IMG/VR virus record: IMGVR_UViG_3300043411_000921
Span: 177,400-241,399 of that record
DNA length: 64,000 nucleotides
Strand: one strand, 5' to 3'
In this document: piece by piece, positions 1,627 through 60,009 of the stretch
How the letters are laid out: each line of letters begins with the position of its first letter
How positions within the stretch are numbered: position 1 is the stretch's first letter
Made by a program: the position numbers and the translations under genes
The notes under the pieces: generated by a model
What the model was told of the DNA's origin: nothing
Seen by the model: the letters and a program-made list of their open reading frames with translations, nothing else
Databases searched by the model: none

Positions 1627-1885
1627 CACCAATCTTCTCTGCCACTTGTAAATCAATTCTCGTTATCACTTTCCCGTTCTCTTCAATGGTAACAAACCTA
1701 GTCGTTACCTTCTCTGGAAGAATCCCAGTTCCCCTCGAAACATAACAAACCTCAGTAGATGTTTGGATCATCAGAATGGCACCTATAACCTTCGCCCAAA
1801 CAGGGCCTATACGCCTTATCTGTGACAGCAAATCATTTCGATGGCTCGGAGGACGTTGGAGAAATTTGGAGCCCGTATAAGGCAT
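1574..1885 (-). CDS. possible small hypothetical protein (start uncertain)
   Basis: Fills the gap downstream of the endolysin on the same strand; overlaps repeat element copy 1. Confidence 0.3.
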   Translation of the reverse strand: MPYTGSKFLQRPPSHRNDLLSQIRRIGPVWAKVIGAILMIQTSTEVCYVSRGTGILPEKVTTRFVTIEENGKVITRIDLQVAEKIGVNQAGFVFSAVAGPQRQ

Positions 1886-1901
1886 CCTGGAGCGATTTAG
1901 G
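1797..1901 (+). repeat. ~105-bp bipartite dispersed element (family A), copy 1
   Basis: TATACGCCTTAT at 1808 and TCCTGGAGCGATTTAG at 1885 (offset 77). Confidence 0.85.
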
Positions 1902-2718
1902 GGATGGTGATAAGTGTGTCGATGGTTCTTGGGACAATCATCCCATGTTTCTTACCAGATTGCAGAAGAAGTTTTGTCGTTTGCGGTCCTGGAACACCAT
2001 CACATTCTTCTGGTTTCAAACCGAGTTTTAGTTGTTCGGCTTTCCAAAAGGCTTTGTCTTCGTTTTTGTCGAAGTTGAAAGGAAGGTATCCAGCAGCTTT
2101 GAGTGCTGCTGGAAGCCAAGGACCACAATCTCCTGGACCTCGGTTTGATGTTTGGTTGCTGTGATTGTAAACACCAACGACATCTCTTCCCTTTCCATCC
2201 CCAGAAATACGATTAACCAACCTCAGCATTGGTTTGTCTTTCTCGGTGTCCCAGGGAATTTGTCGTTGGATGCCAAGAATGGCAGTTAAGAAGTCAATGA
2301 ACAACACTGCCTTTTGGATTTGATCTTCATACAGATCGCCATTGTCATGCTGAACCATTTCTAGTCCACAAGTGTGGGCATTGACTGCTCCCGCTTGCCA
2401 AGTGAAGAATTCCAATGGATCATTCTGGATGATCCAGTCGCCGCTGAAATCTTCAGTAAAATCCCAACTCACTTGTCTTTCCGTATTGGTTTGATATCTT
2501 GCATATCTTAAGTCCAAGTCTGTGTTTGGCCCATAGCCGGGAAGAAGCTTTCCCAGTTTTCCATGAACAGTGTGGCAAACGATGGATCGAATCCATGTTT
2601 TCCTGGGACTTTTATCTGTGACTTGTTTGATTTTGAGGGCAGGAGCTTCTGGATCGAGCCAGGATGTTGTTTTCAACCCTGGAATTCCCAGCTTTCTGCC
2701 TTTGATGATGATGGACAT
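1897..2718 (-). CDS. endolysin: N-acetylmuramoyl-L-alanine amidase (Amidase_2-like) with C-terminal peptidoglycan-binding motif
   Basis: IVCHT, VSWDF, WQAG.VN..TCGLEM, VYNH..PGDCG motifs; C-terminal DGVPGPQT. Confidence 0.8.
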   Translation of the reverse strand: MSIIIKGRKLGIPGLKTTSWLDPEAPALKIKQVTDKSPRKTWIRSIVCHTVHGKLGKLLPGYGPNTDLDLRYARYQTNTERQVSWDFTEDFSGDWIIQNDPLEFFTWQAGAVNAHTCGLEMVQHDNGDLYEDQIQKAVLFIDFLTAILGIQRQIPWDTEKDKPMLRLVNRISGDGKGRDVVGVYNHSNQTSNRGPGDCGPWLPAALKAAGYLPFNFDKNEDKAFWKAEQLKLGLKPEECDGVPGPQTTKLLLQSGKKHGMIVPRTIDTLITIP

Positions 2719-2726
2719 AAAAGAGA

Positions 2727-2756
2727 ATGCCTCCGGCTGTAAATAGCCGGAGGCAT
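2727..2756 (-). promoter_or_regulatory. hairpin covering the endolysin RBS, with a late-promoter motif in its loop
   Basis: Perfect 12-bp stem ATGCCTCCGGCT/AGCCGGAGGCAT; minus-strand TATTTA at the loop; GGAGG in the 3' arm 11 nt before the ATG. Confidence 0.7.
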
Positions 2757-2787
2757 CTCAGGGGTTTAGAATTGGTGTTGTGTTGGA

Positions 2788-3255
2788 TCAGGTGCCGCTG
2801 ATAACAACGGAACCGGAAGCGCCAATGACGAGGAAATTCTTTCCGTCAGACATCAAAGCAACGGAAGGTCCGCCGCCAGTTGTTGCACCAGCCAAACCAC
2901 CAACAGGGAAGGTCAACTTGGAGCCTTTTGTTGCACTGGAGCCGGAAGCAAGAAGGGCAAACACTCTTGTTCCTTCTGCTTCTTGTGAACCTGTCAGAGC
3001 GTGTGCGTGGTTGCTGAGTGTCCTGATCGCAAAGATTGCACCGGGGCATTCATCAGCTTTCGGCATCACGAGTGTCAGAGCTGTTGAGCCGGACACAGTG
3101 ATGACACCAGCTTCGGCTGGTGTGAGTGTCACTGCGGAGGTTTTTGCTTTGATGTTTGGAAGCTTGTATGGAGAGAAACCGGAACTGCCTGCTTGAGCAG
3201 TGTCCAGATCTGTCACAACACCGTTGTCGCCAATTGTTGTTTTAGTTGCTGGCAT
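2788..3255 (-). CDS. putative virion structural/decoration protein
   Basis: Gly/Ser/Thr/Ala-rich beta-type composition; late motif TATTTA upstream. Confidence 0.5.
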   Translation of the reverse strand: MPATKTTIGDNGVVTDLDTAQAGSSGFSPYKLPNIKAKTSAVTLTPAEAGVITVSGSTALTLVMPKADECPGAIFAIRTLSNHAHALTGSQEAEGTRVFALLASGSSATKGSKLTFPVGGLAGATTGGGPSVALMSDGKNFLVIGASGSVVISGT

Positions 3256-3316
3256 GATCGTCTATATCCTTCTACCCAAGTGGGCTGGGAATAAATATAC
3301 AGGTTTTGCTGGAAAA

Positions 3317-3583
3317 TCAGTCTGCTGAGGAAGATGAGGGTTCGGTTGTGGTAGTGGTGGCCGAAGTGTTCTTTTGCACTTGATTCTCATTCCAGCGTCT
3401 ACCGAAGTAGAGAGCAAGAAGAGGAGTAAGAAACCCAGTGGCAATTGTCACATCAAACGCACGAATGTGTGGCGTAGAGAAGATGTTGAGAATGAACCAG
3501 AGAAGGGTTGCGGCAAAGGAAGTGTAAACCATTGTAAAGCTCAAACTGTCCTTTCCTTGGCTGTTTTTGAGAAGAAGTTTCAT
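3317..3583 (-). CDS. holin-like small membrane protein
   Basis: 88 aa, two hydrophobic helices, hydrophilic tail, lysis-cassette context. Confidence 0.55.
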   Translation of the reverse strand: MKLLLKNSQGKDSLSFTMVYTSFAATLLWFILNIFSTPHIRAFDVTIATGFLTPLLALYFGRRWNENQVQKNTSATTTTTEPSSSSAD

Positions 3584-3591
3584 GTAGTCTC

Positions 3592-4221: not shown

Positions 4222-4226
4222 GCGAA

Positions 4227-5032: not shown

Positions 5033-5036
5033 GACA

Positions 5037-5333: not shown

Positions 5334-5335
5334 TG

Positions 5336-6106
5336 TTAGCTCGTTGAGGATGATCCTACGCTACCACCACCAGAAGGAACACCGCCACCATTATCTGGAC
5401 CAGAGTTGCCAGCCCTTGGAGCAGCAGGATAATCACCTTCAACCTGCTTCTTCGTCTTGGCTGTAAGATCAAAGTCACGCTCCAAAATATTCACCATCTC
5501 TTTAGCAAGTCTTGGCGAGTAGTTCTTTGAAATGTAAAACATTGCTCGATTTAGAATCAAGGATTTTGGATCAATGAGTGTTTGATAGTTGTTCACAAGC
5601 CTAGCAACGCCTTCAGCAAACTTCCTGATGTTGATTTTTGGAACGGGAACAACTTCTGGGGGATTGCTTTCAGTGTCGTCTCCTCCATCGTCACCGCCAC
5701 CAAACGGATCATCTCCACCACCCATGTCCATATCACCAGCATCATCGACAGGTGGTTCTGGTGGAGCTTCTTGCTCAAACAAGAACTTTCCCATCGAGAA
5801 CAAACGTTTTCCTTTTTTCCTTTCGGTCAATGGGGGTGTTTGAATGTTGTCTTTGACTTGTGCAGGATCAACAGGAAGTGCCCCATCCGTTTCCGGCATA
5901 TCCAGAGGGACTGACTCTCTTTCAAACTGCATGAGATACTTGTCAATCTTCTGATCAACAGAAGCTTCTGTCTCTGACAAGGAATCAGAAACACTGGGAA
6001 GCTGAAGAATCTGTTCTGGGCTGGAGACATAGGGCTTTCCATCTCCACCACCCTCTTCCTGTTCTCTCAACAAGAACTCGCTGAAACGTTTCTTTCTCAT
6101 AATCAA
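5336..6106 (-). CDS. acidic low-complexity protein, putative internal head protein
   Basis: FLLREQ and FLFEQ protease-site-like motifs; Gly/Asp/Pro tracts. Confidence 0.6.
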   Translation of the reverse strand: MIMRKKRFSEFLLREQEEGGGDGKPYVSSPEQILQLPSVSDSLSETEASVDQKIDKYLMQFERESVPLDMPETDGALPVDPAQVKDNIQTPPLTERKKGKRLFSMGKFLFEQEAPPEPPVDDAGDMDMGGGDDPFGGGDDGGDDTESNPPEVVPVPKINIRKFAEGVARLVNNYQTLIDPKSLILNRAMFYISKNYSPRLAKEMVNILERDFDLTAKTKKQVEGDYPAAPRAGNSGPDNGGGVPSGGGSVGSSSTS

Positions 6107-6918
6107 AGGATCCTTCCACCAAGAACTTCAACTGGAGGAGATGATTGTGGCAATCCAACGCTCGTCTCCTTCTCATTTGAAACAACAGCTTGGACAGAGT
6201 AAAGCTGGTGGAGCTTCGCCATCTCAGCAATCAACATTCTCATTTCAACAACATTCCAATTGATTTCTCGCATGGAGCGATTGAGATATTCAAGCTTCTC
6301 TCCTGGGAAATCAAGGAACCAAGCGTGGTGCCATGTGTCAAGAACCAGCACTGGAATTGCCATCAATGGAAGATGAAGGGTATGACCTTCAACAAAAGTG
6401 TTGAAATAACGTTGTTTGAACGGATCGAAGTAACAAACAGCCCAACCTTCTCTGGACGCCATTCCGCAAGCTCTGAAATCCAATTGCCACTGGTCGAAGG
6501 TTCCCCAATCCCTTGAAAGACGCATAAAAGGAATGCTGTCAGCACGAATCTCGGAGTTCAAATCTCCCGTGTTGGTGAACAACAACTCGTGGAACTTCAC
6601 TCCGTTCATGTTGTGAGTCTCATCAATCTTCAACCTTCTGAACTCTGAATCGTTTGGGTTATCTGCATCTGTCTTTGGAACAGAATCCAGCTTCGCAGAA
6701 ATTTTGTTGTGACTTGTGACGTAGCTGTTATACAGCTTTTCGTGGTTTTCCTTTGTTGTGGGGGATGAAACATCGCCCTTCAAAATAAATGAACGAGGCA
6801 TCAACACAGCCGCTTCTGAAACAACAGCTTTTGCCGCTTGTGCTACCTTTCCATCCAAAACTGTTCCAACAGCTTCTCGAATGATCTTCTGGAGATCTTT
6901 TGCATTGAGGGTCGTCAT
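6103..6918 (-). CDS. Fe/Mn superoxide dismutase-like protein (ChrC/SodF-like) with N-terminal leader
   Basis: H(EKLY..YV), HELLF, WGTFDQW, GWAV, PVLVLDTWHHAW, INWNVVE. Confidence 0.85.
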   Translation of the reverse strand: MTTLNAKDLQKIIREAVGTVLDGKVAQAAKAVVSEAAVLMPRSFILKGDVSSPTTKENHEKLYNSYVTSHNKISAKLDSVPKTDADNPNDSEFRRLKIDETHNMNGVKFHELLFTNTGDLNSEIRADSIPFMRLSRDWGTFDQWQLDFRACGMASREGWAVCYFDPFKQRYFNTFVEGHTLHLPLMAIPVLVLDTWHHAWFLDFPGEKLEYLNRSMREINWNVVEMRMLIAEMAKLHQLYSVQAVVSNEKETSVGLPQSSPPVEVLGGRIL

Positions 6919-6924: not shown

Positions 6925-7953
6925 TTACTTCTTCTTCCTTGATCTTACAGTCTCTGTAAATAGACCAGAAAGGGGTGCATGAGCATCATCATCCAATCCA
7001 AGCCTGTCTGCAATGTTCAGCATTCCTCTATCTTCCGCAGCATCCCCAGCCCTTGAAACTCTTGTGTCTCCGAGGGAAGGGAACACCCCCTGATAACTCG
7101 GACCCGACTCCCCAAGAGGGAACAGGATTTCTCTTATTGATTCCCCTTTGGATCCCTCTTCTGGTAATGTTCCACTAGACAACATCCCTGACAACTTTCT
7201 CATCGGGTTTTCTCGTGTGTTCTCCAAGAAGACGTAAGCGAGGGCATCACACGTCACGGATCCTTTTGCGAGCACCTCTTGTTGATATTCGTAGGTGTCC
7301 TCCCCGACCTCCAGGTACTTCGCAGCCTCAAACATGTTGAAAAAGAAGCTGTTTTCCTCGGTCTTGCACCTTCCAAGGACAACAAATCCCTTGGGAATAT
7401 CACCTTCCATGCGAACCTGACCAAAAAGCTTGGGCATGGACTCTTCCCTCCTGGACCAACTGGTGATATTATTCCCGGCTCTAGGTGACATAATAGCGCC
7501 ACGAACGACTCCTTCCTTACCAGGAGTCGTCAAGCCTGTTAGACGCCTCAGATAATCCTCCTGGATGCCAAAGAGAACCCTCCAGGCATATCCCTCTCTC
7601 ACCTGAAAGAATTTCTTGTACCAACCCTGCTCCTTCATCTTCCACATCAGGTCAACCATTTTTTCCAGGCCATCCCTGTTGTTCCATGAATAGTAGTTGC
7701 CAAGAGCAGCAATCAACCTCTTTTCTTCGGGAGAATCCTCTTCCTGAATATTTTCCTCGTAAACGTTCTTCCTCATCCACCCAAAAAGATATTCCCCAAA
7801 AGGTGCGTCTTTCGGAGCTTCTGGTGGAGGAGAATCCTTCACAACAGCAACCTTCTTTTTTGGTTTGGGTGGCAGCCAAGGCTTGTCTGGATCAAACTCC
7901 CAATCATCCCATCCGTCACTTTCCCATAAAAACCTTGAAATTCTAGGCGTCAT
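6925..7953 (-). CDS. putative R-S-E clade ADP-ribosyltransferase-like protein
   Basis: AWRVL ... ITSWS ... YQQEVL in the order of the R, S-x-S and Q/E-x-E motifs. Confidence 0.45.
   Translation of the reverse strand: MTPRISRFLWESDGWDDWEFDPDKPWLPPKPKKKVAVVKDSPPPEAPKDAPFGEYLFGWMRKNVYEENIQEEDSPEEKRLIAALGNYYSWNNRDGLEKMVDLMWKMKEQGWYKKFFQVREGYAWRVLFGIQEDYLRRLTGLTTPGKEGVVRGAIMSPRAGNNITSWSRREESMPKLFGQVRMEGDIPKGFVVLGRCKTEENSFFFNMFEAAKYLEVGEDTYEYQQEVLAKGSVTCDALAYVFLENTRENPMRKLSGMLSSGTLPEEGSKGESIREILFPLGESGPSYQGVFPSLGDTRVSRAGDAAEDRGMLNIADRLGLDDDAHAPLSGLFTETVRSRKKK
7148..7175 (+). repeat. co-oriented motif (family B), copy 1
   Basis: TTGGATCCCTCTTCTGGTAATGTTCCAC. Confidence 0.8.
7471..7575 (+). repeat. 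family A element, copy 2 (inside the ART-like CDS)
   Basis: TAGGTGACATAATAGCGCC at 7482; GATAATCC-TCCTGGATG at 7559 (offset 77). Confidence 0.6.
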
Positions 7954-7998: not shown

Positions 7999-9168
7999 AT
8001 GAAGTTGAAATACCAAAATCAGACAGTAGACATCGTTCTAGGAATGGCCTTCGGTGATGAAGGAAAGGGAAAAGTGGTTGACTATCTTGCTGAGAATTAT
8101 GACTATGTTGTTCGGTTCAATGGAGGGAACAACGCTGGGCACAGTTTGAAGGTTGGCAACTTCAAGACTTCCGTTCATGCACTTCCTTCCGGGGTTTTGC
8201 ATCCACACGTTTTCAACGTGATTGGGAACGGCTGTGTTGTGAACCCAAACCAATTGGCAGATGAGATTCAAAAGATTGGGGCTGGGAGTTTGCAAGGGAG
8301 AGTTTTTGTTTCAGATGCTGCTCATGTGATCACACCTCAGAATATTGAGGAAGATTGCAAAGGTGGAAGCAAAGAGAGGATTGGAACAACGGGAAGAGGG
8401 ATTGGTCCGACTTATGCAGCAAAGATGAATAGAACGGGACTGAGAATGGGAGACCTTCTCAAAGGGGAAGGGAGAGAACTCTTTTCCCAAGATGTTCTGG
8501 ATGTTGTTCTTCCTTTGATCACAAACACCACGAAGCTGCTAAGAACAGCTTGTGATTCTGATGCGAGGATTTTGTTGGAAGGAGCACAAGGTTGTGCTTT
8601 GGATATTGACCACGGGACTTATCCATACGTCACCAGCAGCAATTGTTCCGTTGCTGGAGCACTTTCTGGCACTGGGCTTTCTCACAAAAACATTCGACGT
8701 GTGATTGGAGTTACCAAAGCTTATTCAACAAGAGTTGGAGAAGGTCCATTCCTTTCTGAAATTTTTGGGGAAGAAGCAGAAAGACTTCGTGCTGCTGGAA
8801 ATGAGTACGGAACAACCACTGGAAGACCTCGTAGAGTTGGTTGGTTGGATGCCAAACAACTTCGTGAAGCTTGTCAAATGAATGGTGTTGATCAACTCGT
8901 TGTAACCAAACTTGATGTGCTTTCAGGATTGCCTTATGTTGAAATTGATCACGGTGGGCCAAAGGAAACGAAATCGGGGGCACTCGTTTTCAAAATGAAA
9001 AACCCACAATATTCTAGCTGGGTTTCTATCCCTGAAACCACAACGAAATACTCTGACCTTCCCAAAGAAGCACAGAACTTTGTTGATATCATTGAAAGTG
9101 CAGCATCAGTTCCAGTAACACACGTCTCCATCTCTCCAGATAGATCTGGAACTCTTCCCAGACCATGA
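7999..9168 (+). CDS. purA: adenylosuccinate synthetase
   Basis: GDEGKGK, GGNNAGH, IGTTGRGIGPTY, EGAQG..LDIDHGTYPYVTSS, GTTTGRPRRVGWLD, TKLDVL. Confidence 0.97.
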   Translation: MKLKYQNQTVDIVLGMAFGDEGKGKVVDYLAENYDYVVRFNGGNNAGHSLKVGNFKTSVHALPSGVLHPHVFNVIGNGCVVNPNQLADEIQKIGAGSLQGRVFVSDAAHVITPQNIEEDCKGGSKERIGTTGRGIGPTYAAKMNRTGLRMGDLLKGEGRELFSQDVLDVVLPLITNTTKLLRTACDSDARILLEGAQGCALDIDHGTYPYVTSSNCSVAGALSGTGLSHKNIRRVIGVTKAYSTRVGEGPFLSEIFGEEAERLRAAGNEYGTTTGRPRRVGWLDAKQLREACQMNGVDQLVVTKLDVLSGLPYVEIDHGGPKETKSGALVFKMKNPQYSSWVSIPETTTKYSDLPKEAQNFVDIIESAASVPVTHVSISPDRSGTLPRP

Positions 9169-9542
9169 CAACAACTGAAGATTGGTCATTCAAACCAGGA
9201 GACATTTTCATTATCCCCGCTTCGCATTCATCTGATTGGCAGAATCTATACGACAACATTGGTCGGTACTCTGGCAGCAAATACTTGCAGTTGACCTATC
9301 CTGCTGAGACTCGTCAACAGCCAATCCTTTCCGAAATTGAGATTGATGAACTTTGTTTCTTCTTCAACACCAGAACCCTTGGTCCGAATGGGAAAATCGT
9401 CTTTCTAGGCTTCTCACAGAAAAACCCAGAGACAATGGGTTTGTTCATCAACTCAGAAGGAGCAGTGATTGAAATTGAATTGCTGTTTTTCGAGGAAGAT
9501 GTTGTTGGATATCTCCAGAAAATAGAAGTGGAAAGTGATTAA
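9165..9542 (+). CDS. paralog family protein 1
   Basis: FKPGDIF ... KIVFLGFS..P.T.GLFINSEG..EIEL shared with neighbours. Confidence 0.75.
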   Translation: MTTTEDWSFKPGDIFIIPASHSSDWQNLYDNIGRYSGSKYLQLTYPAETRQQPILSEIEIDELCFFFNTRTLGPNGKIVFLGFSQKNPETMGLFINSEGAVIEIELLFFEEDVVGYLQKIEVESD

Positions 9543-9876
9543 GCCCGGAGATGTTTTCGTTGAGATCATCGGCAAACGCATACGAAAGTCGCAAAGAAAA
9601 CTGAGAGTTTCTTGGTCTGTCGAAATGAGAGACGATATGAGGGCATTCTATAACGTCATCGGACCAGTGATTCCCATTAATTTCCTTCACCCAGAAGGTT
9701 GTGAAAACAACAAAGTCGTTTTCTTGGGATTTAGTAAAACCAGACCCAAGACAACTGGCATGTTCATCAACTCTGAAGGTTCAATTGAGGAAATTGACTT
9801 AGAGTTCTTTGTTGAAGAGATCGTTGGCAAATTCATAACAAAGCTGGAAACAGAGGATAATGAAGATGTTGAATGA
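9535..9876 (+). CDS. paralog family protein 2
   Basis: IKPGDVF ... KVVFLGFS..P.T.GMFINSEG..EIDL. Confidence 0.75.
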   Translation: MIKPGDVFVEIIGKRIRKSQRKLRVSWSVEMRDDMRAFYNVIGPVIPINFLHPEGCENNKVVFLGFSKTRPKTTGMFINSEGSIEEIDLEFFVEEIVGKFITKLETEDNEDVE

Positions 9877-11541: not shown

Positions 11542-12210
11542 TCACCTAAACAAATCCTTCATCTTTTGCTTCAATGCCGAGGATGAAGGATTTTCCTTTT
11601 GTCCCACTTTCTCTTCCTTCTCAACAACAGCGGGAACATTCCACAGGGCATGTCTCACAAAATCTGCATCTAACTCTTCCAGGGTTATTTTTGGCTTGGT
11701 TGAAGCTGGCTGAATTGGCAGTGGGGCAATAACATCCAAAGCCATCTCAAGTTCTGGGTCGGCAGCAGCCAAATCTTGTTGGTTTGATTCGGAGGCGTTA
11801 TACGCCTCATTAGCGCCTTCCTTTTTCTCAACGTCCTCTGACCCGTCCAAACTTTTCTCGGGCTCTAATGAGGCTCCTGGAGCGATCTTGGTGGTCTTGA
11901 TAAAGGGAGTTATCAGTTGGGATGGAAGGATCAGTTCCATCTTGATGAGATATGACAAGTTGGGAGAGAAGATGCAGAGTTGATCTGGGAGAGTGAAGAA
12001 AAACTCAGAGAAGTTTTCTGGATTTAGGAATGCTGGGATAAGAACACCAAATCCAGCCTGATCAGAGATGCTCACACGACAAACAATCAGTTCTTTTTCT
12101 TCTTCTGGGAGAGAAAGAAGGAGAGAAGAAATCGTGTTTGGGATTGGGAATTGATATTCCTTGTCTGGTTCGATCAAAACCAAGTCAGGATCTGCTGGAG
12201 TGTTGGGCAT
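11542..12210 (-). CDS. hypothetical protein
   Basis: 222-aa ORF. Confidence 0.7.
   Translation of the reverse strand: MPNTPADPDLVLIEPDKEYQFPIPNTISSLLLSLPEEEKELIVCRVSISDQAGFGVLIPAFLNPENFSEFFFTLPDQLCIFSPNLSYLIKMELILPSQLITPFIKTTKIAPGASLEPEKSLDGSEDVEKKEGANEAYNASESNQQDLAAADPELEMALDVIAPLPIQPASTKPKITLEELDADFVRHALWNVPAVVEKEEKVGQKENPSSSALKQKMKDLFR
11788..11891 (+). repeat. family A element, copy 3
   Basis: TATACGCCTCAT at 11799; TCCTGGAGCGATCTT at 11875 (offset 76). Confidence 0.85.
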
Positions 12211-13911: not shown

Positions 13912-14016
13912 TTAATCGTCACAGGAGGTATTTTGCGTGACAGGCATTGAGTGTGTTGAGGTGAAGGTCCAACACCTTTTTCAGAGGCGTCTGATAACCT
14001 CCTGCGAGGTTCCAGA
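13911..14016 (+). repeat. family A element, copy 4 (3' end of the HDAC gene)
   Basis: CAGGAGGTATTTTGCGTGACAG at 13922; GATAACC-TCCTGC at 14000 (offset 78). Confidence 0.5.
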
Positions 14017-26678: not shown

Positions 26679-26969
26679 ATGAGTTTCGGGGATGTCAAAA
26701 CAGAGATCGTTCCAAAGGGTGTTATCAGCACCCTCGGAGATGGAAGCCTCAGAATCACAGTCCCAACAACTTTTGAAAACTCTGTCACATCAACACATCT
26801 TAGCGGAGCACAACTCCCGATCGTCCGTCAAATCCCCACCTCAACGCTACGGCACTTATACGCCTTATTAGAGGCTTCAAATCATTCCAAGCCACTCTCA
26901 CCCAACCAAGATATTCTCGGGCGCTATAAAGCATCCTGGAGCGATTTAGGTTTGGAGGAATTCGCATAG
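26679..26969 (+). CDS. hypothetical protein (C-terminus formed by a family A element)
   Basis: TAGTTA at 26667, 6 nt before the ATG. Confidence 0.55.
   Translation: MSFGDVKTEIVPKGVISTLGDGSLRITVPTTFENSVTSTHLSGAQLPIVRQIPTSTLRHLYALLEASNHSKPLSPNQDILGRYKASWSDLGLEEFA
26846..26950 (+). repeat. family A element, copy 6
   Basis: AACGCTACGGCACTTATACGCCTTAT (core at 26857); TCCTGGAGCGATTTAGG at 26934 (offset 77). Confidence 0.88.
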
Positions 26970-42522: not shown

Positions 42523-42540
42523 TTCCCTTACAATCCTTCC

Positions 42541-42568
42541 TTGGATCCCTCTTCTGGTTATCCTCCAC
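42541..42568 (+). repeat. family B motif, copy 3 (intergenic)
   Basis: TTGGATCCCTCTTCTGGTTATCCTCCAC. Confidence 0.85.
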
Positions 42569-42595
42569 AACCGGGCATCACACCAACGAGAAAAC

Positions 42596-52695: not shown

Positions 52696-53970
52696 TCAAG
52701 GGACAGCTATCATTTTTCTAGTGGCTAGGTCAAAACCCTTTGGCAATTTTGTCTTAGCGTCGAATGTTGCTTCACGCAGCCCAATCGCATCTTCCAGGTT
52801 GCTCCCAGTAAAATCAACATCGTAAAACGCAGCACCAAAAAAATCAACATCCTGCAAATAAGCATTTCTCATGTGAACTCCTGAAAAACTTGAATGTTTC
52901 AAACTTGTGGCAAACAAGTCAACAGAGTTAAGAACACATTGAACGAAGCCACAAGCGTCCATTTTTGCTTCCCTAATCTTGGCACCCCCAAGTTGGCAGC
53001 GTGTGAACAAGCCTTTGAAAAGCTGGATTTTTGAAAGGTTTGCCTTTGCGAACCTGCAATTTATGAAGTTTATCCTTTGAAGGTTGGCGCCTGTGAAATC
53101 TGATCCTGAGAAATCCACGTCTTCAATGATCATGTTTTTTTCACTGAGGCCAATGGTTTTCAAGATTTGCTTGTTTTCCATGTTGCGGAAATCTGATCCC
53201 TGAAAGTCAAGAAGCTTTTTATCTTTCTCGAACAGAGAGGTGATGTGGCCCTTTGGAGCATCAAGAATGCTTGGTTTGTTATTCTTCTCCACGACACTTA
53301 CAATTTCGACTTGGGCTGTGTTGAAGAACACGGCTTGGTTTGGTTCGAGGTGATGGATAATTTGAAAACCATCATCAACAACCCCATCATATCCAAGCAC
53401 CTTCCAGAGAAGGTAAGACCATTTTCCGGTTGGGCCGCCACCACGATCTTTCTTCTGTTCGGGTTGAAAATCTGGATCAGCAGAATCGGCACCCGCCAAC
53501 AATCTTGTAATGTTCCAGATCATTGAACCGTGAAGATTTTGATTGTCTCTTGCCCCTCTTCTTGCATACTCAATCGCTTTTTGTGAAAATCCCCAAGCGA
53601 CAAGTTTTTCTACATCTTGCTTGAGGTTTTCCGCGGAATGAGTCGTGAAATCCAGCAATCTCGCTGTTGGTTTTGGTCTGATTACAACAGCATAAGGTCT
53701 GTTGATCGCAAACCTCATCATCTTCTTTCGATCAAGGAAGTAAGCATAGAAGCCAATAGGTGTCTTGTACTGATTCTTGAGATACAAACCCATCCTGGGA
53801 TAATCTGAGAAGTGAACAAACAAGTTCTTGTCTGTCTTGTTTTGCTGTTCAAGTGCAGCAAGTTGTTCTTGCCAAGGAGTTGGTTTCACTCCCAGTTCCC
53901 TCATGTGCCTGGAGATTTCAAGAAGAGTGAGAGACCTGATAAGAGGGGAAAGAGAATTGCTGCTGCTCAT
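52696..53970 (-). CDS. ART-like N-terminal domain fused to pentapeptide repeats
   Basis: FVHFS..PIGFYAY..GYDGVVD..EPNQAVFF; C-terminal VDFSG/SDFTG/ANLQR/ANLSK repeats. Confidence 0.7.
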   Translation of the reverse strand: MSSSNSLSPLIRSLTLLEISRHMRELGVKPTPWQEQLAALEQQNKTDKNLFVHFSDYPRMGLYLKNQYKTPIGFYAYFLDRKKMMRFAINRPYAVVIRPKPTARLLDFTTHSAENLKQDVEKLVAWGFSQKAIEYARRGARDNQNLHGSMIWNITRLLAGADSADPDFQPEQKKDRGGGPTGKWSYLLWKVLGYDGVVDDGFQIIHHLEPNQAVFFNTAQVEIVSVVEKNNKPSILDAPKGHITSLFEKDKKLLDFQGSDFRNMENKQILKTIGLSEKNMIIEDVDFSGSDFTGANLQRINFINCRFAKANLSKIQLFKGLFTRCQLGGAKIREAKMDACGFVQCVLNSVDLFATSLKHSSFSGVHMRNAYLQDVDFFGAAFYDVDFTGSNLEDAIGLREATFDAKTKLPKGFDLATRKMIAVP

Positions 53971-54038
53971 GGGAGATAAGTAAATTCATCCTTGAGAGGA
54001 AGATAAAAGTCAAGAAGACATATAAGAAGTCTTCCCTC

Positions 54039-54061
54039 TCCCTCTTCTGGTTATGTTCCAC
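54039..54061 (+). repeat. family B motif, copy 4 (intergenic)
   Basis: TCCCTCTTCTGGTTATGTTCCAC. Confidence 0.75.
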
Positions 54062-54082: not shown

Positions 54083-55714
54083 TTACGCGACACCCCCAAC
54101 TTTCCAAGAATTCAATGCCGAGATCAAATTGGGAAGTTCATCGTTCAGTTTTTTCAAAGCGCCTCTGAGATTTTCAATACTCGTTTTGAGAAGCTCGGCT
54201 TGTGCAGTTGGAGCGCCGCTGGCGCGACCCAATGGAGAATGACTTGAAACGTTTGTTCCTCTAAGAACGTTTTGCATAGCAGGGCTCACATCCTTTCCCG
54301 AAACCACTGCTTGAGTACCTCGATTGCTGGGCACTTGTCCGGGTGCTGCGGAAATGGAACTGGTCTCCACATTCTCCAAAAGATCAACGTTCGTTCCACT
54401 TTTGGGGACAACACTATTCAATGTCTGGAGAGCGGAAGCAAGGGCCTTCGTGCCATCCTGCAACGCAACAATCGCATTCTTTTTTGCGTTTCCGATAGCG
54501 TTGAGACCGTCTTTTAATTGCTTGGAATTACGCTGGGACAGGTTTCCACTTGGTCCGTAAGCAACCTCGGATGCCCCAGAAAGGACTTGCAAGTTGTCGT
54601 TGATGGTCTTGGTGGTATACCTTGGGGTTTGACTCCCTGGCCCTTCCCAGTATCTTCCACCTTCAGCAAACACAAACTTTTTTGCAGCCCAAGCAACCAA
54701 AGCAGCAAGCCCAGCCAAAATTGCTCCAATCAAGAACTGTTCATCCAACCTTCTTTGGGAAGTTGTTGCTTCTGCTACGAGTTCTCTGTTTGTTCCTGTG
54801 AGACGAGTTGTGAGTTGCTGGAGAGATCCGACTTCTGTCACAAGGATTTCACCAAAGTTGTTGATGTCCTGAATAACCTTGGCAAGTGCGGCACGGTTTT
54901 CTTCAACCTTATTTTTTCCCGCTTCATTGGGAGCAACACCTGGAACAGGAGCAACACCTGGAACAGGAGCAACACCTGGAACAGGTGGCAGCGTGGCTGT
55001 TGACACCGGCCCGCTCGTTTCACCGATAAAACGTTGCTGATACCTTTCAAAGTCACCTTCGGTCAGAATTCCGTTCTCAACCAAACTTTTCAAGCTTGAG
55101 AGAAGATTCAACACTTCGCTAACAGCCGACTGGGGTTGTGCTGATACTGGTTGAGTTCGTGCTCGTGCCAGAGTACCAGGAGAAGACGACACTTGTGCGC
55201 CAACGAGTGACTCAGTATCTTTGAGTGCCTTGGAAAGTGTTTTTGCTGAATCAACAACACCTGTGTTGCTTGAGTTAAAGAACAAAGGAAGAACCTTAGC
55301 ACATGCAGAAGCAACAATACCAGCTTGCCTTTTTTGCTCTGCTCTCCAGTTATCAGCAGCTTTTTCTACCGCTTTGAATTCTTTGGTTGGGGCAATCTTG
55401 TCAAAAATGGCCTTGGCTTCTTTTGTTCTTTGACCTTCGAAAGCATCAAGGAACCAAGCCAGGAACCAGATGGGAGTTTCTTTGTCGATGCGGGCGGAGT
55501 TTTCCCTCAACTCTACCAAGGCAGCTTGAATTTGCTGTGTCTTTTGACCTTCGTCCGTTGTTTGTTTTCCAACAGCGGACTTGAGTTTGTCACCCAGGGA
55601 GAGTTTGATCAGTTTGGCAACGTTGTTGTCTGAGAACAGAACGTTTGCCATTGCACTGAAGGCGCCTGCTGGGCCGATGACATCAGGGCCATTGAATGTG
55701 ATTTTGACTGCCAT
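54083..55714 (-). CDS. Ala-rich helical protein with one hydrophobic segment, putative ejected/internal protein
   Basis: 543 aa; ILTE and LDE sites; FLIGAILAGLAALVAWAA; TACTTA at 55727. Confidence 0.7.
   Translation of the reverse strand: MAVKITFNGPDVIGPAGAFSAMANVLFSDNNVAKLIKLSLGDKLKSAVGKQTTDEGQKTQQIQAALVELRENSARIDKETPIWFLAWFLDAFEGQRTKEAKAIFDKIAPTKEFKAVEKAADNWRAEQKRQAGIVASACAKVLPLFFNSSNTGVVDSAKTLSKALKDTESLVGAQVSSSPGTLARARTQPVSAQPQSAVSEVLNLLSSLKSLVENGILTEGDFERYQQRFIGETSGPVSTATLPPVPGVAPVPGVAPVPGVAPNEAGKNKVEENRAALAKVIQDINNFGEILVTEVGSLQQLTTRLTGTNRELVAEATTSQRRLDEQFLIGAILAGLAALVAWAAKKFVFAEGGRYWEGPGSQTPRYTTKTINDNLQVLSGASEVAYGPSGNLSQRNSKQLKDGLNAIGNAKKNAIVALQDGTKALASALQTLNSVVPKSGTNVDLLENVETSSISAAPGQVPSNRGTQAVVSGKDVSPAMQNVLRGTNVSSHSPLGRASGAPTAQAELLKTSIENLRGALKKLNDELPNLISALNSWKVGGVA
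54930..54985. repeat. 3 x 18-bp tandem repeat encoding PVPGVA
   Basis: GGAGCAACACCTGGAACA x3. Confidence 0.9.
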
Positions 55715-55725: not shown

Positions 55726-56079
55726 CTAAGTATTATCCTTCACCTCCCGCATGAAACGATAAATCCCAGCTTTCTTTACATCTGTGGTTGCTGGATTCAC
55801 AATCCCGGTAAAAACCCAGCCAATCATCTGAGTCTCACAGACTAACACCTTCAAATAACTCAAGGTCTTCTTGGGAACTTCAACCAAAACAAACAGTTGT
55901 TTTGGTTTGAGGTAAACGACCATACTCCAGCGTTGATGTGGAAGACCTACAACCCTTCTTCCATGACGCGAACAAAGAAGAGGCCGTGCCGTGTCAGAGA
56001 CAAACTCATACAATCCACCAACCCGAACATCTACTTCTGGAATCTGAACCTTTTTACGAATCCGCTTGTTGTTTGACAT
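55726..56079 (-). CDS. hypothetical protein (SH3-like)
   Basis: ORF divergent from the sigma gene; start chosen at MSNNKR. Confidence 0.55.
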   Translation of the reverse strand: MSNNKRIRKKVQIPEVDVRVGGLYEFVSDTARPLLCSRHGRRVVGLPHQRWSMVVYLKPKQLFVLVEVPKKTLSYLKVLVCETQMIGWVFTGIVNPATTDVKKAGIYRFMREVKDNT

Positions 56080-56143
56080 TTCTCTTCTCAATGACTTGAA
56101 ACAATCTTATACAATGCTTACAGTTGCTTCTGGAGCAAGAATT

Positions 56144-56953
56144 ATGTCAATCCAGAGACGCAGAACCAAGAGATATCCAAACACCCCCAGGCCCAACAAC
56201 AAGGAAGATCATGAACTGTTTCTGAAATATCAAGGAACCAAAGTTCACAATGAGAATGGTAAACTCATCTCCTCAGACTTGAAGCTGAGGAATCAGCTAG
56301 CAGATCGTAATGCGAGGCTTGTGACTTTTATGGTCAACAAGTTTTACAGCCGCAAGAAGAAGCATCTCGAACTCAGAGACGATCTTCTTCAAGAAGGTCA
56401 CATTGGTTTGGTCCATGCTGTTGAAGGTTTCAAGCCTGAAATGGGAATCATGTTCAGCACTTATGCTGGAATTTGGATTCGGCAAGCTATCAAGACCTAC
56501 CTTCTGGAACACGATCCATTCATGCCCATTCCAGGACACGTCAGAACAGCCAACAACAAACTCGTTAAGCATTGCAAAGAAGTCGGCAAACCCACCGACA
56601 ATTTCTTCATTTTGACTGATGAGGAATTGGCAACCCTTGAAATCACAAAGAACATGGTTGATTGTGTTGAAGCAGCAAGAAAAACCGCAAAGACAAAAAC
56701 CGTGTTTGTTGATTTCTTCCAAGACCTGAGACCAAACTCGGAAGTTTCTGAAACGAGTTTTCTGAAAGGACTCCCAGCCGAGCAAGATGATCGGTTTATC
56801 AACAAGCGTCTTTTGCTGGCAGCGAAGAAGGCATTTACCCAACTTACTCTGAGAGAGCGTTGTGTTCTTCTGGAGAGGTATGGAATTGATTCCAGGCCAT
56901 ATTGGAATGGCGAAACAGTTTTGAGTGAAGAGGATAACGAGGTGACAAAATGA
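56144..56953 (+). CDS. sigma70-family RNA polymerase sigma factor lacking region 4.2
   Basis: RNQL...NARLV, DDLLQEG.IGL..AVE.F.PE.G..FSTYA.IWIRQAI, IPGH, LT.RER.VL..RYG. Confidence 0.88.
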   Translation: MSIQRRRTKRYPNTPRPNNKEDHELFLKYQGTKVHNENGKLISSDLKLRNQLADRNARLVTFMVNKFYSRKKKHLELRDDLLQEGHIGLVHAVEGFKPEMGIMFSTYAGIWIRQAIKTYLLEHDPFMPIPGHVRTANNKLVKHCKEVGKPTDNFFILTDEELATLEITKNMVDCVEAARKTAKTKTVFVDFFQDLRPNSEVSETSFLKGLPAEQDDRFINKRLLLAAKKAFTQLTLRERCVLLERYGIDSRPYWNGETVLSEEDNEVTK

Positions 56954-57572: not shown

Positions 57573-57588
57573 GTAGCTCTAGGAGACA

Positions 57589-57816
57589 ATGAGTTCCCGC
57601 TACCAAAAAGAAAAGCGTTTTCGTCCTCGCAACGACCCTTACCAAAGAACACAATTCAACGCCGGGAAGTATACCCGAATTGAAAGAGTTGTGGTTCTCC
57701 CTCCAAAACAACACCAACAAGATCTTCAACAGCATCAAGAGCCAGATGAGAATAGTGACATGATTCTCTCTGGTTCTGTTGATATTGCTGAAAATCAAAC
57801 TGAAACAGTGGGTTGA
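57589..57816 (+). CDS. hypothetical protein
   Basis: AGGAG RBS. Confidence 0.6.
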   Translation: MSSRYQKEKRFRPRNDPYQRTQFNAGKYTRIERVVVLPPKQHQQDLQQHQEPDENSDMILSGSVDIAENQTETVG

Positions 57817-57836
57817 ATAGTTACCGCTCATAGATC

Positions 57837-58541: not shown

Positions 58542-58681
58542 GAGTCTTTTACTTTCTCAACGACACCGATTGCATCTTCGATGATTGCAACTTCGTCTGC
58601 GTCGAGATCGTGCTTGTACTCATCAACAAACTCTTCAAGGCGTTCAGACAGTCGATTCAGAATCTTGGCTCTTGTTTGCAT
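58496..58681 (-). CDS. small acidic protein
   Basis: 61-aa ORF. Confidence 0.55.
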   Translation of the reverse strand: MQTRAKILNRLSERLEEFVDEYKHDLDADEVAIIEDAIGVVEKVKDSQVDDEEDEDGGVED

Positions 58682-59024
58682 TGTGTGTTTGGTCCGTTTC
58701 TTCTGGAAGGGGAGTTACCTGGAAGTTCTTGTCTTTGACAATCCAACCCGTTCGAGTATCCCCATATAGACAGTTGTAATAGAAATGACCATAAGAATCC
58801 ACCACTTCCCTCAACAACACAAAAACTTCCGAGAATCCCTTCAATCCCCACGGTTGCACTGCCCCAGTGAGCGCGGTTCCAAATTCCGTCGTCGTTGAAA
58901 TTATGGTTTCATTTTTCTTCAAACGCGATTCCAGCAAAAGTTCCAAATCAGGATAAACAGCAACAAACACTGGCTTCCTCGTGTTTCTTCTGTTTTTCAG
59001 TGTGCAAATGGATCCTGGTTTCAT
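58644..59024 (-). CDS. hypothetical protein (SH3-like)
   Basis: MKPGSIC ... CLYGDTRTGWI. Confidence 0.6.
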   Translation of the reverse strand: MKPGSICTLKNRRNTRKPVFVAVYPDLELLLESRLKKNETIISTTTEFGTALTGAVQPWGLKGFSEVFVLLREVVDSYGHFYYNCLYGDTRTGWIVKDKNFQVTPLPEETDQTHNANKSQDSESTV

Positions 59025-59044
59025 GTTCCCTAGCTAGACTCATC

Positions 59045-59290
59045 ATGTTCGTTGCTGAATCTCAGAGATACTATGACCACACCTTCCAGGAAAGCAAGAC
59101 GATCCTAAGAACCCAATATGACTCCCTTCTTTGCTCTCTTCTGGTTATCTTCCACAACGGCTCCCAATACCTCTATTTTTCAGTACCTCCAGAGGTTCAC
59201 CAGTCCCTCCTCGATTCCCCAAGCCCAGGAAAATTCTTCCACTCCAACATCCGAGGAAAATTCAGGCACGAACGTCAAACCAATATCTAA
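59045..59290 (+). CDS. KTSC domain protein
   Basis: S..I....YD....LLVIFHNGSQYLYFSVPPEVH..LL.SPSPGKFFH.NIRG. Confidence 0.85.
   Translation: MFVAESQRYYDHTFQESKTILRTQYDSLLCSLLVIFHNGSQYLYFSVPPEVHQSLLDSPSPGKFFHSNIRGKFRHERQTNI
59134..59155 (+). repeat. family B motif, copy 5 (inside KTSC gene)
   Basis: CTCTCTTCTGGTTATCTTCCAC. Confidence 0.7.
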
Positions 59291-59294
59291 CCCC

Positions 59295-59888
59295 ATGAAA
59301 CTAAGCCAAATCCTCTTCACCAACGAAAATTCTGGTGACTTTTCAGGGGCTGGAACCTTCCAAGGTGGACCATTCGGCTTTGGAAACAAACATCAACTCG
59401 CTGCACATGAACCCTGGGAAGGTCTCGAAGATCAGGAAGAAACAGATGAAGTCTTTCTCAAAGAAAGAAGTCCGTCCGACATCTTGTACCGCGATCTCCC
59501 AGGATTTCCCAGGATGAACACCTTGGCAAAACCCGTAGACCACATTCCCCATTCTCCATCAGACGAAGAGAGATACAACATCCCAGATCTCATTCCCCCA
59601 GGAAGAGATGGAGAAGCTGGAGAACACTTCGGCTTTGGACCTCTTGAAGAAGATCCAGCCGTTCTTGCTCGCCACACCGATTGGATCAAAAAAGAAACCG
59701 AGTCGGAGCACGCTGGATATACCTCCAGTGAAATTGCAACCAACTCAGTTCCAACTCATGGTGGAAGCATGGGAGTTATTGCCAAACCCATCAAGCACAC
59801 TCCTGGTCCCGTTGACATCTACAAAAAAGGTTCCGGTCCCGGTTATTCCCTCGGAGAATCTCTTCTCCTCAGCAACCTCCTCTTCTAG
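59295..59888 (+). CDS. hypothetical, putative internal head protein
   Basis: Leader MKLSQILFTNE; FLKE and LEE sites. Confidence 0.65.
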   Translation: MKLSQILFTNENSGDFSGAGTFQGGPFGFGNKHQLAAHEPWEGLEDQEETDEVFLKERSPSDILYRDLPGFPRMNTLAKPVDHIPHSPSDEERYNIPDLIPPGRDGEAGEHFGFGPLEEDPAVLARHTDWIKKETESEHAGYTSSEIATNSVPTHGGSMGVIAKPIKHTPGPVDIYKKGSGPGYSLGESLLLSNLLF

Positions 59889-59904
59889 CCTCCACACCAT
59901 AAAC

Positions 59905-60009
59905 GCTACGGCACTTATACGCCTTATCCGTGCCACCAAATGGTTCAGACGGGTGAGAGTGCGTCAAAACAATTCGGGAGCCTTAAAAAGGCTCCTGGAG
60001 CGATTTGAA
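59905..60009 (+). repeat. family A element, copy 14 (intergenic)
   Basis: AACGCTACGGCACTTATACGCCTTAT identical to copy 6 (core at 59916); TCCTGGAGCGATTTG at 59993 (offset 77). Confidence 0.88.

What the first reader, a model, noticed from the sequence alone, without database searches (positions are those of the whole stretch)
1797..60009. Dispersed ~105-bp bipartite, fixed-spacing DNA element written into coding sequence about every 4 kb
Seen in sequence: a left arm (TATACGCCTTAT or CAGGAGGCTTAT-like) and a right arm (ATAAGCC-TCCTGGAGCGATTT-like) recur 76-78 bp apart (77 in 10 of 14 copies), with a variable centre. Left-arm starts: 1808, 7482, 11799, 13922, 23046, 26857, 35189, 38111, 43124, 46835, 48408, 52012, 57359, 59916. 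Weaker candidates lie near 17801 and 32065-32160. The arms are imperfect inverted repeats of each other, and GC and TA steps recur at roughly 10-bp intervals within them. Copies 6 and 14 share 26 identical bases, and the four best copies have the same asymmetric orientation on +. Most copies lie inside unrelated genes on both strands (portal, terminase, primase, uvsE, SbcCD, gp15-like, HDAC) without breaking frames, so the constraint appears to be on the DNA. Inference: a genome-wide set of sites for a dimeric, DNA-wrapping factor. Possible analogies are strong gyrase sites with periodic arms, genome-organisation or packaging/ejection marks, or repeated replication-initiation sites. I know of no named phage system matching this.
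Basis: partly seen in the sequence, partly recalled or inferred. Interest (0 to 1): 0.92.

Follow-up and report, generated by a model that had tools for sequence, protein, structure and literature searches.

The report
Dispersed 100-bp repeat in jumbo phage
Four copies (not fourteen) of a roughly 105-base non-coding DNA repeat with conserved ends and a fixed length are scattered through this T4-like jumbo phage genome; selection keeps them, but what they do is unproven.

Summary
The window is part of a 241-kb freshwater T4-like jumbo phage. The other ten match no better than thousands of chance arm pairs. One of them (38111) is an ordinary conserved protein segment.

The real family has at least 18 non-orthologous members. 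About 11 loci lie in this phage lineage and at least 9 in a phage with an unrelated terminase. I found none in 788 kb from 80 more distant relatives, in cultured phages, or in representative bacterial genomes.

Each copy has side-specific end boxes: left type A or B, and a right box around ATCCTGGAGCGATT. The interior is weakly symmetric and occurs in both orientations. Length is fixed at 97-98 bp. There is no common reading frame, no Rfam hit and no hairpin covariation.

The ends are under strong constraint: 5% substitutions against 18% in other intergenic DNA and 38% at four-fold sites.

Three copies are intergenic or at gene ends, and three of the four lie near convergent gene junctions. 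One sits in frame in a protein linker.

Best reading: a MITE/BIME-like repeat retained as a protein-recognised DNA site. The process it serves is unknown.

The parts
1798..1904 (+). Copy c1. Left box (type A) about 1806-1819, interior 1820-1876 in the 'core minus' orientation, right box 1877-1898.
   Evidence: nhmmer E = 3e-24. No coding signal in any frame. It lies between the minus-strand genes 1574-1771 and 1897-2718. The TAA stop of the latter (1897-1899) lies in the end of the right box. Orthologues in L010, L012, L170, L171 and L186 keep the same orientation.
11794..11894 (+). Copy c2. Left box 11799-11810, right box 11868-11888, interior 'core plus'. It lies in frame, antisense, inside gene 11542-12210(-), where it encodes a linker of about 33 residues.
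   Evidence: nhmmer E = 1e-18. The coding score drops to about 0 across the element while the frame stays open. All five homologues carry it. The element part has 0 synonymous-only codons against about half in the flanks. Arms differ from relatives at 1/38 to 3/38 positions, against 33-42% at four-fold sites.
26844..26952 (+). Copy c3. Extended left box about 26843-26868, right box 26926-26947, interior 'core plus'. It lies in the gap between convergent genes and is overlapped by the 3' tail of the small ORF 26679-26969(+).
   Evidence: nhmmer E = 4e-27. The coding score falls inside the element. In relative L174 the same ORF stops inside the element. The surrounding four small genes are absent from relatives with 59-86% capsid identity, so this is a variable region.
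59903..60011 (+). Copy c4. Extended left box about 59902-59927, right box 59986-60006, interior 'core minus'. It is intergenic, between genes 59118-59888(+) and 60048-60431(+), about 1 kb upstream of the tRNA array.
   Evidence: nhmmer E = 3e-26. Non-coding. Orthologues in L002, L009, L175, L179 and L188 keep the same orientation. Arms differ from L009 at 4/52 positions, against 36.5% at four-fold sites.

Best explanation
**What it is.** The element is a lineage-specific interspersed DNA repeat of about 105-115 bp. In kind it is closest to bacterial mosaic or miniature repeats (BIME/REP, MITE).

**How it most likely works.**
- A weakly palindromic unit was copied to many unrelated places in these phage genomes, and into a second phage.
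- The copies are now retained as double-stranded DNA sites.
- A sequence-specific protein or protein pair reads two different end boxes held a fixed distance apart. The left box is type A or B. The right box is centred on ATCCTGGAGCGATT.
- The roughly 65-85 bp between the boxes acts as a spacer that is bent or wrapped. This would explain why its length is fixed and why it works in either orientation.
- The copies sit at gene-module boundaries, often where genes converge.

**Shown.**
- The family and its anatomy.
- The absence of a protein or RNA-structure reading.
- The length constraint.
- Purifying selection on the ends.
- The narrow distribution.
- The stability of orthologous copies.

**Inferred.**
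- That a protein binds.
- That the DNA is bent.
- How the copies spread.
- Which process is served. My guess is DNA topology or architecture at transcription-unit ends, ahead of packaging or replication.
For: - **Real family.** Four strong copies in the window. There are 26 distinct sequences, 18 of them non-orthologous, in relatives and in a second phage.
- **Not protein.** Stops occur in every frame in some copy, and one-base length differences occur between copies.
- **Not structured RNA.** No Rfam hit. No consensus fold on either strand. Arm complementarity is the same within and between copies, 21.3 against 21.2 of 58 pairs.
- **Side-specific ends, reversible interior**.
- **Fixed length.** 97-98 bp in 18 non-orthologous copies.
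- **Selection.** Arms 13/244 changed, against 422/2393 in other intergenic DNA (p = 6e-8) and 3138/8314 at four-fold sites. The centre is 45/312. Synonymous sites are frozen in c2.
- **Orientation does not follow genes.** Element orientation is independent of flanking gene orientation but uniform within a genome neighbourhood: 4/4 in the window, 6/6 in L001, 3/3 in L105.
- **Position.** Three of four window copies lie within 320 nt of a convergent junction (P = 0.003, threshold chosen post hoc).
- **Phasing.** GC/TA phasing at about 10 bp in window-type copies.
- **Spread to a second phage.** That phage's large terminase is only 26% identical over a short stretch.
Against: - No binding protein is identified.
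- No transposase, recombinase or nucleoid-protein gene was recognised among the window genes scanned.
- The 10-bp phasing rests largely on the shared, homologous arms, so it amounts to roughly one ancestral sequence. It is absent from type-B copies.
- Other alignable intergenic DNA is also well conserved (18%), and the element's centre is no better than that.
- Conservation of the arms could partly reflect short-patch gene conversion between copies rather than selection for binding.
- The convergent-junction and GC-skew associations rest on very few independent loci.
Confidence: 0.42

Rival explanations
1. A purely selfish, non-autonomous transposable element (MITE) mobilised in trans. It would have no function for the phage and would survive only because it lands where it does little harm.
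For: - It is small, non-coding, multi-copy and at unrelated loci.
- Type-B and R/R copies have imperfect terminal inverted repeats of 10-14 nt or more.
- It is present in a phage with an unrelated terminase.
- Degenerate copies exist, such as the one in the part of L006 left of the window.
- One copy is tolerated in frame in a gene.
- MITEs are known, though rare, in phages (PMC11602168).
Against: - No target-site duplication is visible at any copy (by eye on the alignment).
- There is no presence/absence or orientation polymorphism among orthologous copies in relatives from about 83% to 99% nucleotide identity.
- The ends evolve three times more slowly than other intergenic DNA and seven times more slowly than four-fold sites.
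- The strict length constraint has no ready explanation under this model.
- No transposase was recognised in the window.
- The 18-mer is absent from one genome each of 185,579 bacterial and archaeal species.
Confidence: 0.2
2. A PeSL-like regulatory cassette of T4-type phages. It would be a promoter and/or terminator unit whose repeated copies also serve as joints for homologous exchange of gene modules.
For: - The phage is T4-like: gp23 capsid and gp20 portal.
- Copies are intergenic, and c3 lies in a variable region next to the capsid gene.
- In L001, direct copies bracket single genes: the large terminase between two copies, and a 1023-aa gene between two others.
- The phage encodes its own sigma-like protein.
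- PeSLs are described in PMC2839356 and PMC4122927.
Against: - Orientation does not follow the flanking genes. Counts are 5 antisense, 5-6 sense, 2 convergent and 1 divergent.
- No sigma-70-type promoter or stem-loop terminator falls in the copies.
- There is no conserved hairpin.
- The phage's evident terminators are ordinary GC hairpins located elsewhere.
Confidence: 0.14
3. A site-specific recombination or inversion site, either an inverton or an attC-like cassette boundary. Its interior would be flipped, or its flanked genes excised, by a recombinase.
For: - The interior is found in both orientations relative to fixed outer ends.
- Short inverted repeats bound the interior.
- Arrays in direct orientation bracket genes in L001.
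Against: - No orthologous set differs in interior orientation. This covers c1 in 6 genomes, c2 in 8, c3 in 3 and c4 in 6.
- No recombinase was recognised in the window.
- An interior of 65-85 bp is very short for synapsis (general knowledge).
- attC-type hairpin complementarity is not maintained.
Confidence: 0.08
4. A small RNA gene or an mRNA-processing or stability element, for example an RNase III-type hairpin, transcribed across the repeat.
For: - It is intergenic, about 100 nt long and has conserved ends.
- Copy c4 alone folds well, with z = -4.2.
Against: - No Rfam family matches.
- There is no consensus structure on either strand with 4 or 14 sequences.
- Fold energies of c1-c3 are ordinary.
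- There is no compensatory pairing.
- The interior is reverse-complemented between copies, which would change any RNA completely.
- Orientation is unrelated to the flanking transcription units.
Confidence: 0.07
5. One reading: about 14 or more sites, one every 4 kb or so, embedded in coding sequence genome-wide.
For: - There is a modest excess of weak arm pairs over codon-order shuffles at one intermediate threshold: 31 against 15.9, p = 0.005.
- The left part of 57359 resembles c1 at 16 of 20 bases.
Against: - Profile searches do not find ten of the 14 at a significant level.
- Thresholds loose enough to include them admit about 2000 pairs in both real and shuffled sequence.
- 38111 is a normal conserved protein segment.
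Confidence: 0.03

Closest known systems
REP / BIME (bacterial interspersed mosaic elements) and REPINs of enterobacteria and pseudomonads
   Same: - About 100 bp, extragenic and multi-copy.
- Built as a mosaic of a few alternative end motifs around a palindromic unit that occurs in both orientations.
- Often at 3' ends and between convergent genes.
- Known to bind gyrase and IHF (general knowledge).
   Different: - REP units are true hairpins. Here complementarity is weak and not maintained.
- This family is in virulent-type phage genomes, not chromosomes.
- No RAYT-type gene was seen.
- The sequences are unrelated.
MITEs (for example the Correia, ERIC and RUP elements; viral MITEs in PMC11602168)
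   Same: - Small and non-coding.
- Imperfect terminal inverted repeats in some copies.
- Dispersed, and shared between two different phages.
   Different: - No target-site duplication.
- No insertion polymorphism.
- Two different, side-specific ends in most copies.
- Strong constraint on the ends and on length.
PeSL promoter-terminator cassettes of T4-type phages (PMC2839356, PMC4122927)
   Same: - Repeated intergenic units in T4-like genomes.
- Enriched at variable regions and flanking small gene modules.
- Plausible joints for modular exchange.
   Different: - PeSLs are a sigma-70-type early promoter plus a stem-loop, oriented with the genes.
- Neither feature is present here.
Rickettsia palindromic elements (RPE)
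   Same: One copy (c2) is carried in frame inside a protein-coding gene as an extra linker segment and is inherited by all relatives.
   Different: - Only one of the real copies is in a gene.
- No gene version lacking the segment was found, so insertion is inferred rather than shown.
Composite protein-wrapped DNA sites: P1 parS, lambda cosB, the Mu strong gyrase site
   Same: - Two arm boxes at a fixed distance across a bent spacer.
- About 100 bp in size.
- Helical phasing of sequence signals.
   Different: - Those sites occur once per replicon and have known binding proteins.
- This element is multi-copy and no binder is known.
- The resemblance is by analogy only.

Membership tests
MITE | Terminal inverted repeats of at least 10-15 bp | tested here: inconclusive
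   Type-B/R and R/R copies have imperfect terminal inverted repeats, for example 10 nt at 90% in L105:954-1040. The four window copies (type A/R) share only a core of about 7 nt. The tool reported a 14-nt inverted repeat in c2 and none in c1 or c3.
MITE | Target-site duplication flanking each copy | tested here: not met
   Flanks of 26 aligned copies show no direct duplication (by eye on the alignment).
MITE | Presence/absence polymorphism or an autonomous partner with the same ends | tested here: not met
   Every orthologous site examined is occupied. No transposase was recognised in the window. No match in representative bacterial genomes. The other 177 kb of the genome was not scanned for proteins.
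REP/BIME/REPIN | Palindromic units that form hairpins, with complementarity maintained | tested here: not met
   Within-copy complementarity is 21.3 of 58 pairs, equal to the between-copy value of 21.2. Fold energies are ordinary for c1-c3.
REP/BIME/REPIN | Mosaic of alternative flanking motifs around a unit found in both orientations; extragenic, at 3' ends | tested here: met
   End types A, B and R occur in several combinations, with the interior in either orientation. Three of four window copies lie near convergent junctions.
REP/BIME/REPIN | Cognate RAYT (Y1 transposase) gene | not testable with these tools
   None among the window proteins scanned. The rest of the genome and the host are not available.
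PeSL (T4-type promoter-early stem-loop) | Sigma-70-type promoter plus stem-loop terminator, co-oriented with genes | tested here: not met
   No promoter-like or terminator-like site falls in the six L001 copies. Orientation is unrelated to the genes. No hairpin.
PeSL (T4-type promoter-early stem-loop) | Intergenic position in variable regions of a T4-like genome, flanking small modules | tested here: met
   The phage has a T4-like capsid and portal. c3 lies in a variable region. L001 copies bracket single genes.
Integron attC | Conserved R''/R' boxes (RYYYAAC / GTTRRRY) and a folded bottom-strand hairpin; integrase nearby | tested here: not met
   The end boxes do not fit the consensus (by eye on the sequence). 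No maintained hairpin. No integrase was recognised in the window.
Inverton (invertible switch) | Both orientations of the same locus within a population or among close relatives | tested here: not met
   All orthologues of c1, c2, c3 and c4 have the window's orientation.
Any Rfam RNA family | Match to a covariance model | tested here: not met
   Only tRNAs reach the gathering score in the window. Nothing plausible at E <= 5 in L001, which has six copies.
Strong topoisomerase/gyrase site | Enzyme-dependent cleavage at a defined position; phased flexible arms | not testable with these tools
   Only the phasing could be examined. It is present in type-A copies and not in type-B copies.

The most novel reading that the evidence does not exclude
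The repeats are a new kind of phage cis-element: fixed-length, helically phased sites with different left and right boxes. A phage or host DNA-handling machine would wrap them, for example a topoisomerase at converging transcription units, or a replication or packaging factor that gives them a genome-wide polarity. They would disperse like a mobile repeat, would be shared between unrelated phages of one host, and would be tolerated even inside a coding region.
Probability: 0.18. Interest if true: 0.75.

Novelty: new variant of a known kind. Interest (0 to 1): 0.5.

Why it matters
- Interspersed repeats under selection are well known in bacterial chromosomes but hardly described in virulent-type phages, where every base is under pressure.
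- A 100-bp repeat with fixed length, two different ends and a reversible interior, shared by two phages with unrelated terminases, would give a handle on one of two things. One is a DNA-level process in uncultured jumbo phages: topology, replication, packaging or module exchange. The other is a repeat-spreading mechanism that leaves no target duplication.
- The family also links uncultured phages that probably share a host.
- For the scan itself, this case shows how a real four-copy family can be inflated by eye into a genome-wide pattern.

Tried and rejected
- **Protein-coding reading.** I translated six frames for all copies. No shared open frame was found. An apparent start and ORF in L001 copies did not hold up.
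- **tRNA or other known RNA.** ARAGORN and Rfam gave nothing.
- **Consensus RNA structure.** Tested with 4 and 14 sequences on both strands, with no result.
- **Free-end pairwise arm alignment.** It was too noisy. I replaced it with a column-based test.
- **Sigma-70 promoter and terminator scan of L001.** Nothing fell in the copies. By-eye checks for Bacteroidota-type and T4 late-type promoter motifs in the arms were unconvincing.
- **Homologue test of the 38111 candidate.** It is not an insertion.
- **Empty site for c3.** The relatives have different genes there, so no comparison was possible.
- **Wider searches.** 80 more distant T4-like relatives gave one weak hit. Cultured phages gave none. 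Bacterial genomes gave chance hits only. The metagenome scan returned only close relatives plus chance hits.
- **Whole-element conservation rank along the genome.** Unremarkable when arms and centre are pooled.
- **Link to the second motif.** I suspected the 19-25 nt 'D3' motif was an extension of the element. It is a separate motif.

Full report
**What the window is.** The window is part of the viral contig IMGVR_UViG_3300043411_000921 (241 kb), because four fetched loci from that contig are identical to it.
- It encodes a T4-type major capsid protein, portal, prohead protease, two sheath-like proteins, a large terminase, a chaperonin and a primase. It also carries a 22-gene tRNA array.
- It has no nucleotide match among cultured phages. 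The nearest cultured capsid proteins are only 33-42% identical: Flavobacterium phage immuto and a Microcystis phage.
- It is therefore an uncultured freshwater T4-like jumbo myovirus.

**Checking the observation.**
- The two arm motifs are each far above chance only because of these four loci.
- I built a profile from 14 family members collected in the window and in related contigs. It scores the four at E = 1e-18 to 4e-27. It gives only marginal values for 38111 (0.004-0.055), 23046 (0.12) and 57359 (0.23, left part only). It does not report the other seven at E <= 1.
- In a direct arm-pair count, strict criteria give 4 pairs in the window and none in dinucleotide shuffles.
- The ten weak copies have 1-6 left and 6-12 right mismatches. 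At the loosest cutoff counted (at most 6 and 11) the window holds 2133 such pairs against 1955 +/- 66 in shuffles.
- Codon-order shuffles leave a modest excess at one intermediate threshold: 31 against 15.9 +/- 3.6. I could not attach this to any convincing extra locus.
- The best marginal candidate, 38111, encodes a segment that aligns residue for residue, without insertion, to homologues of 30% identity. It is ordinary coding sequence.
The 14-copy, every-4-kb, inside-genes picture is not.

**Where the four copies lie.** I used a codon-usage score trained on the long genes of the window.
- c1 (1798-1904) lies between two minus-strand genes. The stop codon of the amidase-like gene 1897-2718 sits in the end of the right box.
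- An ORF that seemed to start inside c1 is broken by a stop in the orthologues. The true downstream gene starts at 1771.
- c3 (26844-26952) fills a convergent gap. It is overlapped by the tail of a small ORF that ends at a different place in a 95%-identical relative.
- c4 (59903-60011) is intergenic.
- c2 (11794-11894) is in frame, antisense, inside gene 11542-12210. The coding score falls to zero over the element while the frame stays open.

**Not a protein and not a structured RNA.**
- No frame is shared. Every frame has a stop in some copy, and copies differ by single-base indels.
- Rfam finds only the tRNAs and nothing in a locus with six copies.
- Neither strand gives a consensus fold. 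Only c4 folds better than its shuffles.
- Around the best dyad axis, 37% of mirrored positions are complementary. The number is the same whether the two arms come from one copy or from different copies: 21.3 against 21.2 of 58.
- The inverted-repeat character is therefore a weak property of the family consensus and not a maintained hairpin.

**The family and its anatomy.** Pattern scans and profile searches recovered 26 distinct sequences, 18 of them non-orthologous.
- About 11 loci are in the window phage's lineage. These include one on the opposite strand elsewhere in the same genome (L134) and a degenerate one 1.7 kb left of the window (in L006).
- At least 9 are in a second phage (L001, L105, L140). 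Its large terminase is a bona fide terminase but only 26% identical over a short stretch to the window's.
- Aligned, the copies show a nearly invariant right box, and a left box that is either type A (the window type, 26 nt shared by c3 and c4) or type B.
- Type B is an imperfect inverted copy of the right box, differing at about four positions.
- Between the boxes lies a weakly symmetric interior with an asymmetric core of about 19 nt.
- The interior occurs in both orientations relative to the fixed ends. c2 and c3 carry one orientation, and c1 and c4 the other. In the second phage, one copy's left half plus core is about 90% the reverse complement of another copy's right half plus core.
- Other end combinations also occur: A with inverted B, and R with inverted R.
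- The distance between fixed end columns is 97 or 98 bp in all 18 non-orthologous copies, although their interiors are strongly diverged.

**Distribution.**
- The family is absent from 788 kb around the capsid gene of 80 more distant relatives, apart from one weak hit.
- It is absent from cultured phages.
- Its most conserved 18-mer is absent as a real copy from one genome for each of 185,579 bacterial and archaeal species.
- The metagenome scan returned only close relatives of the two phages plus chance hits.

**Evidence for selection.** I compared the window with four relatives that differ at 33-42% of four-fold degenerate sites.
- The arms differ at 13 of 244 positions and the centres at 45 of 312.
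- Other alignable intergenic DNA differs at 422 of 2393 positions.
- The arms are significantly better conserved than that (p = 6e-8). The centres are not (p = 0.18).
- In c2, five orthologous genes of about 76% protein identity show no codon with a purely synonymous change across the roughly 33 element codons, while about half of the flanking codons do. All changes inside the element alter the protein.
- Every orthologous site examined is occupied, and every orthologue has the same interior orientation as the window: c1 in 6 genomes, c2 in 8, c3 in 3 and c4 in 6.
- The copies are therefore old, stable and constrained at their ends. They are not recent insertions or active switches.

**Context and polarity.**
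- Element orientation bears no relation to the flanking genes, yet it is uniform locally: 4 of 4 in the window, 6 of 6 in L001 and 3 of 3 in L105.
- Element orientation has the sign of the local GC skew in every locus checked, including the opposite-strand copy in L134. Few of these loci are independent.
- Three of the four window copies lie within 320 nt of a convergent gene junction, while 9% of the window does (P = 0.003, threshold chosen after the fact).
- In the second phage, direct copies bracket single genes, including the terminase.

- GC steps conserved in at least half the copies fall at alignment columns 12, 23, 41, 71, 81 and 91. TA steps lie about 5 bp out of phase.
- The combined signal beats column permutations overall (p = 0.006) and strongly in the window lineage (p < 0.0003). 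It does not in the type-B copies (p = 0.07).
- The signal sits mostly in arms that are homologous between copies, so it counts as roughly one observation.

**Interpretation.**
- The long alignable similarity at unrelated loci and in two phages requires copying of an ancestral unit. In origin this is therefore a dispersed repeat of the MITE/BIME kind.
- The features that argue the copies are now kept as double-stranded DNA sites are:
  - the lack of target duplications and of polymorphism;
  - the two different, strongly conserved ends;
  - the fixed length;
  - the indifference to interior orientation and to gene orientation.
- On this reading, protein(s) read both ends across a bent or wrapped spacer.
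- I prefer this reading (0.42) over the four rivals:
  - a purely selfish MITE (0.20);
  - a PeSL-like promoter/terminator cassette (0.14);
  - a recombination or inversion site (0.08);
  - an RNA element (0.07).
- Which process is served is not shown. DNA topology or architecture at converging transcription units is my first guess, followed by replication or packaging polarity.
- No candidate binding protein or mobilising enzyme was recognised among the window's genes.

**Limits.**
- Only 64 kb of the 241 kb genome, plus fragments, was available.
- Gene calls are my own codon-usage calls.
- The association statistics rest on few independent loci.
- Conservation of the arms could in part reflect gene conversion between copies.

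Noticed in passing
window 7148-7175, 34886-34923, 42535-42572, 54034-54061, 59128-59155 (all + strand): A second dispersed motif of 19-25 nt (core TCTTCTGGTTATCCTCCAC). There are 5 copies against 0.013 expected. All are on + whatever the gene strand. Two fall within called genes (342-aa gene 6925-7953, portal gene 3' end) and a third (59128) overlaps the called start of gene 59118-59888. It is conserved in orthologues, also present in the second (unrelated-terminase) phage, and present elsewhere in this genome on the minus strand. Function unknown. It could be a strand-specific DNA mark or a phage promoter.
   Followed up: partly
window, upstream of genes starting at 29706, 32566, 25906, 22264, 15933, 26239 (all - strand), 26679 (+ strand): A CTAGTTA(C/T)-like or CATAGTTA-like motif recurs 20-50 nt upstream of structural genes. 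It is a candidate phage-specific promoter, possibly read by the sigma-like protein at 56066-56953.
   Followed up: no
window 52696-53970 (-): A 424-aa pentapeptide-repeat protein. Some pentapeptide-repeat proteins mimic DNA and act on gyrase (general knowledge). That could matter if the repeats are topoisomerase sites.
   Followed up: no
window 15987-19013 and 19121-22264 (-): Two adjacent paralogues of about 1000 aa, both matching the tail-sheath C-terminal domain. Each is unusually long for a sheath protein.
   Followed up: no
window 43905-47129 (+): A single 1074-aa protein combining an SbcD-like phosphoesterase domain with an SbcC/Rad50-like ATPase. These are usually two separate genes.
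   Followed up: no
window 61045-63962 (+): An array of 22 tRNA genes at the end of the window. Copy c4 lies about 1 kb upstream of it.
   Followed up: no
window 54930-54985: A perfect 18-nt unit repeated in tandem, with three overlapping 20-nt matches, inside gene 54083-55714 (family D7). It encodes a short peptide repeat.
   Followed up: no
window 9165-9542 and 9535-9876 (+): Neighbouring small genes share a 79-nt stretch at 71% identity (family D4). They look like a tandem gene duplication.
   Followed up: no
window 6103-6918, 7999-9168, 13919-14788, 40142-41881, 48117-49046: Auxiliary genes unusual for a phage: a superoxide-dismutase-like protein, adenylosuccinate synthetase, a histone-deacetylase-family protein, a GroEL-type chaperonin and the UV endonuclease UvdE.
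   Followed up: no
L154:5968-6263 versus L134:~960: Two 97%-identical relatives of another part of this genome differ by an indel of about 295 nt that is not at a repeat copy.
   Followed up: no
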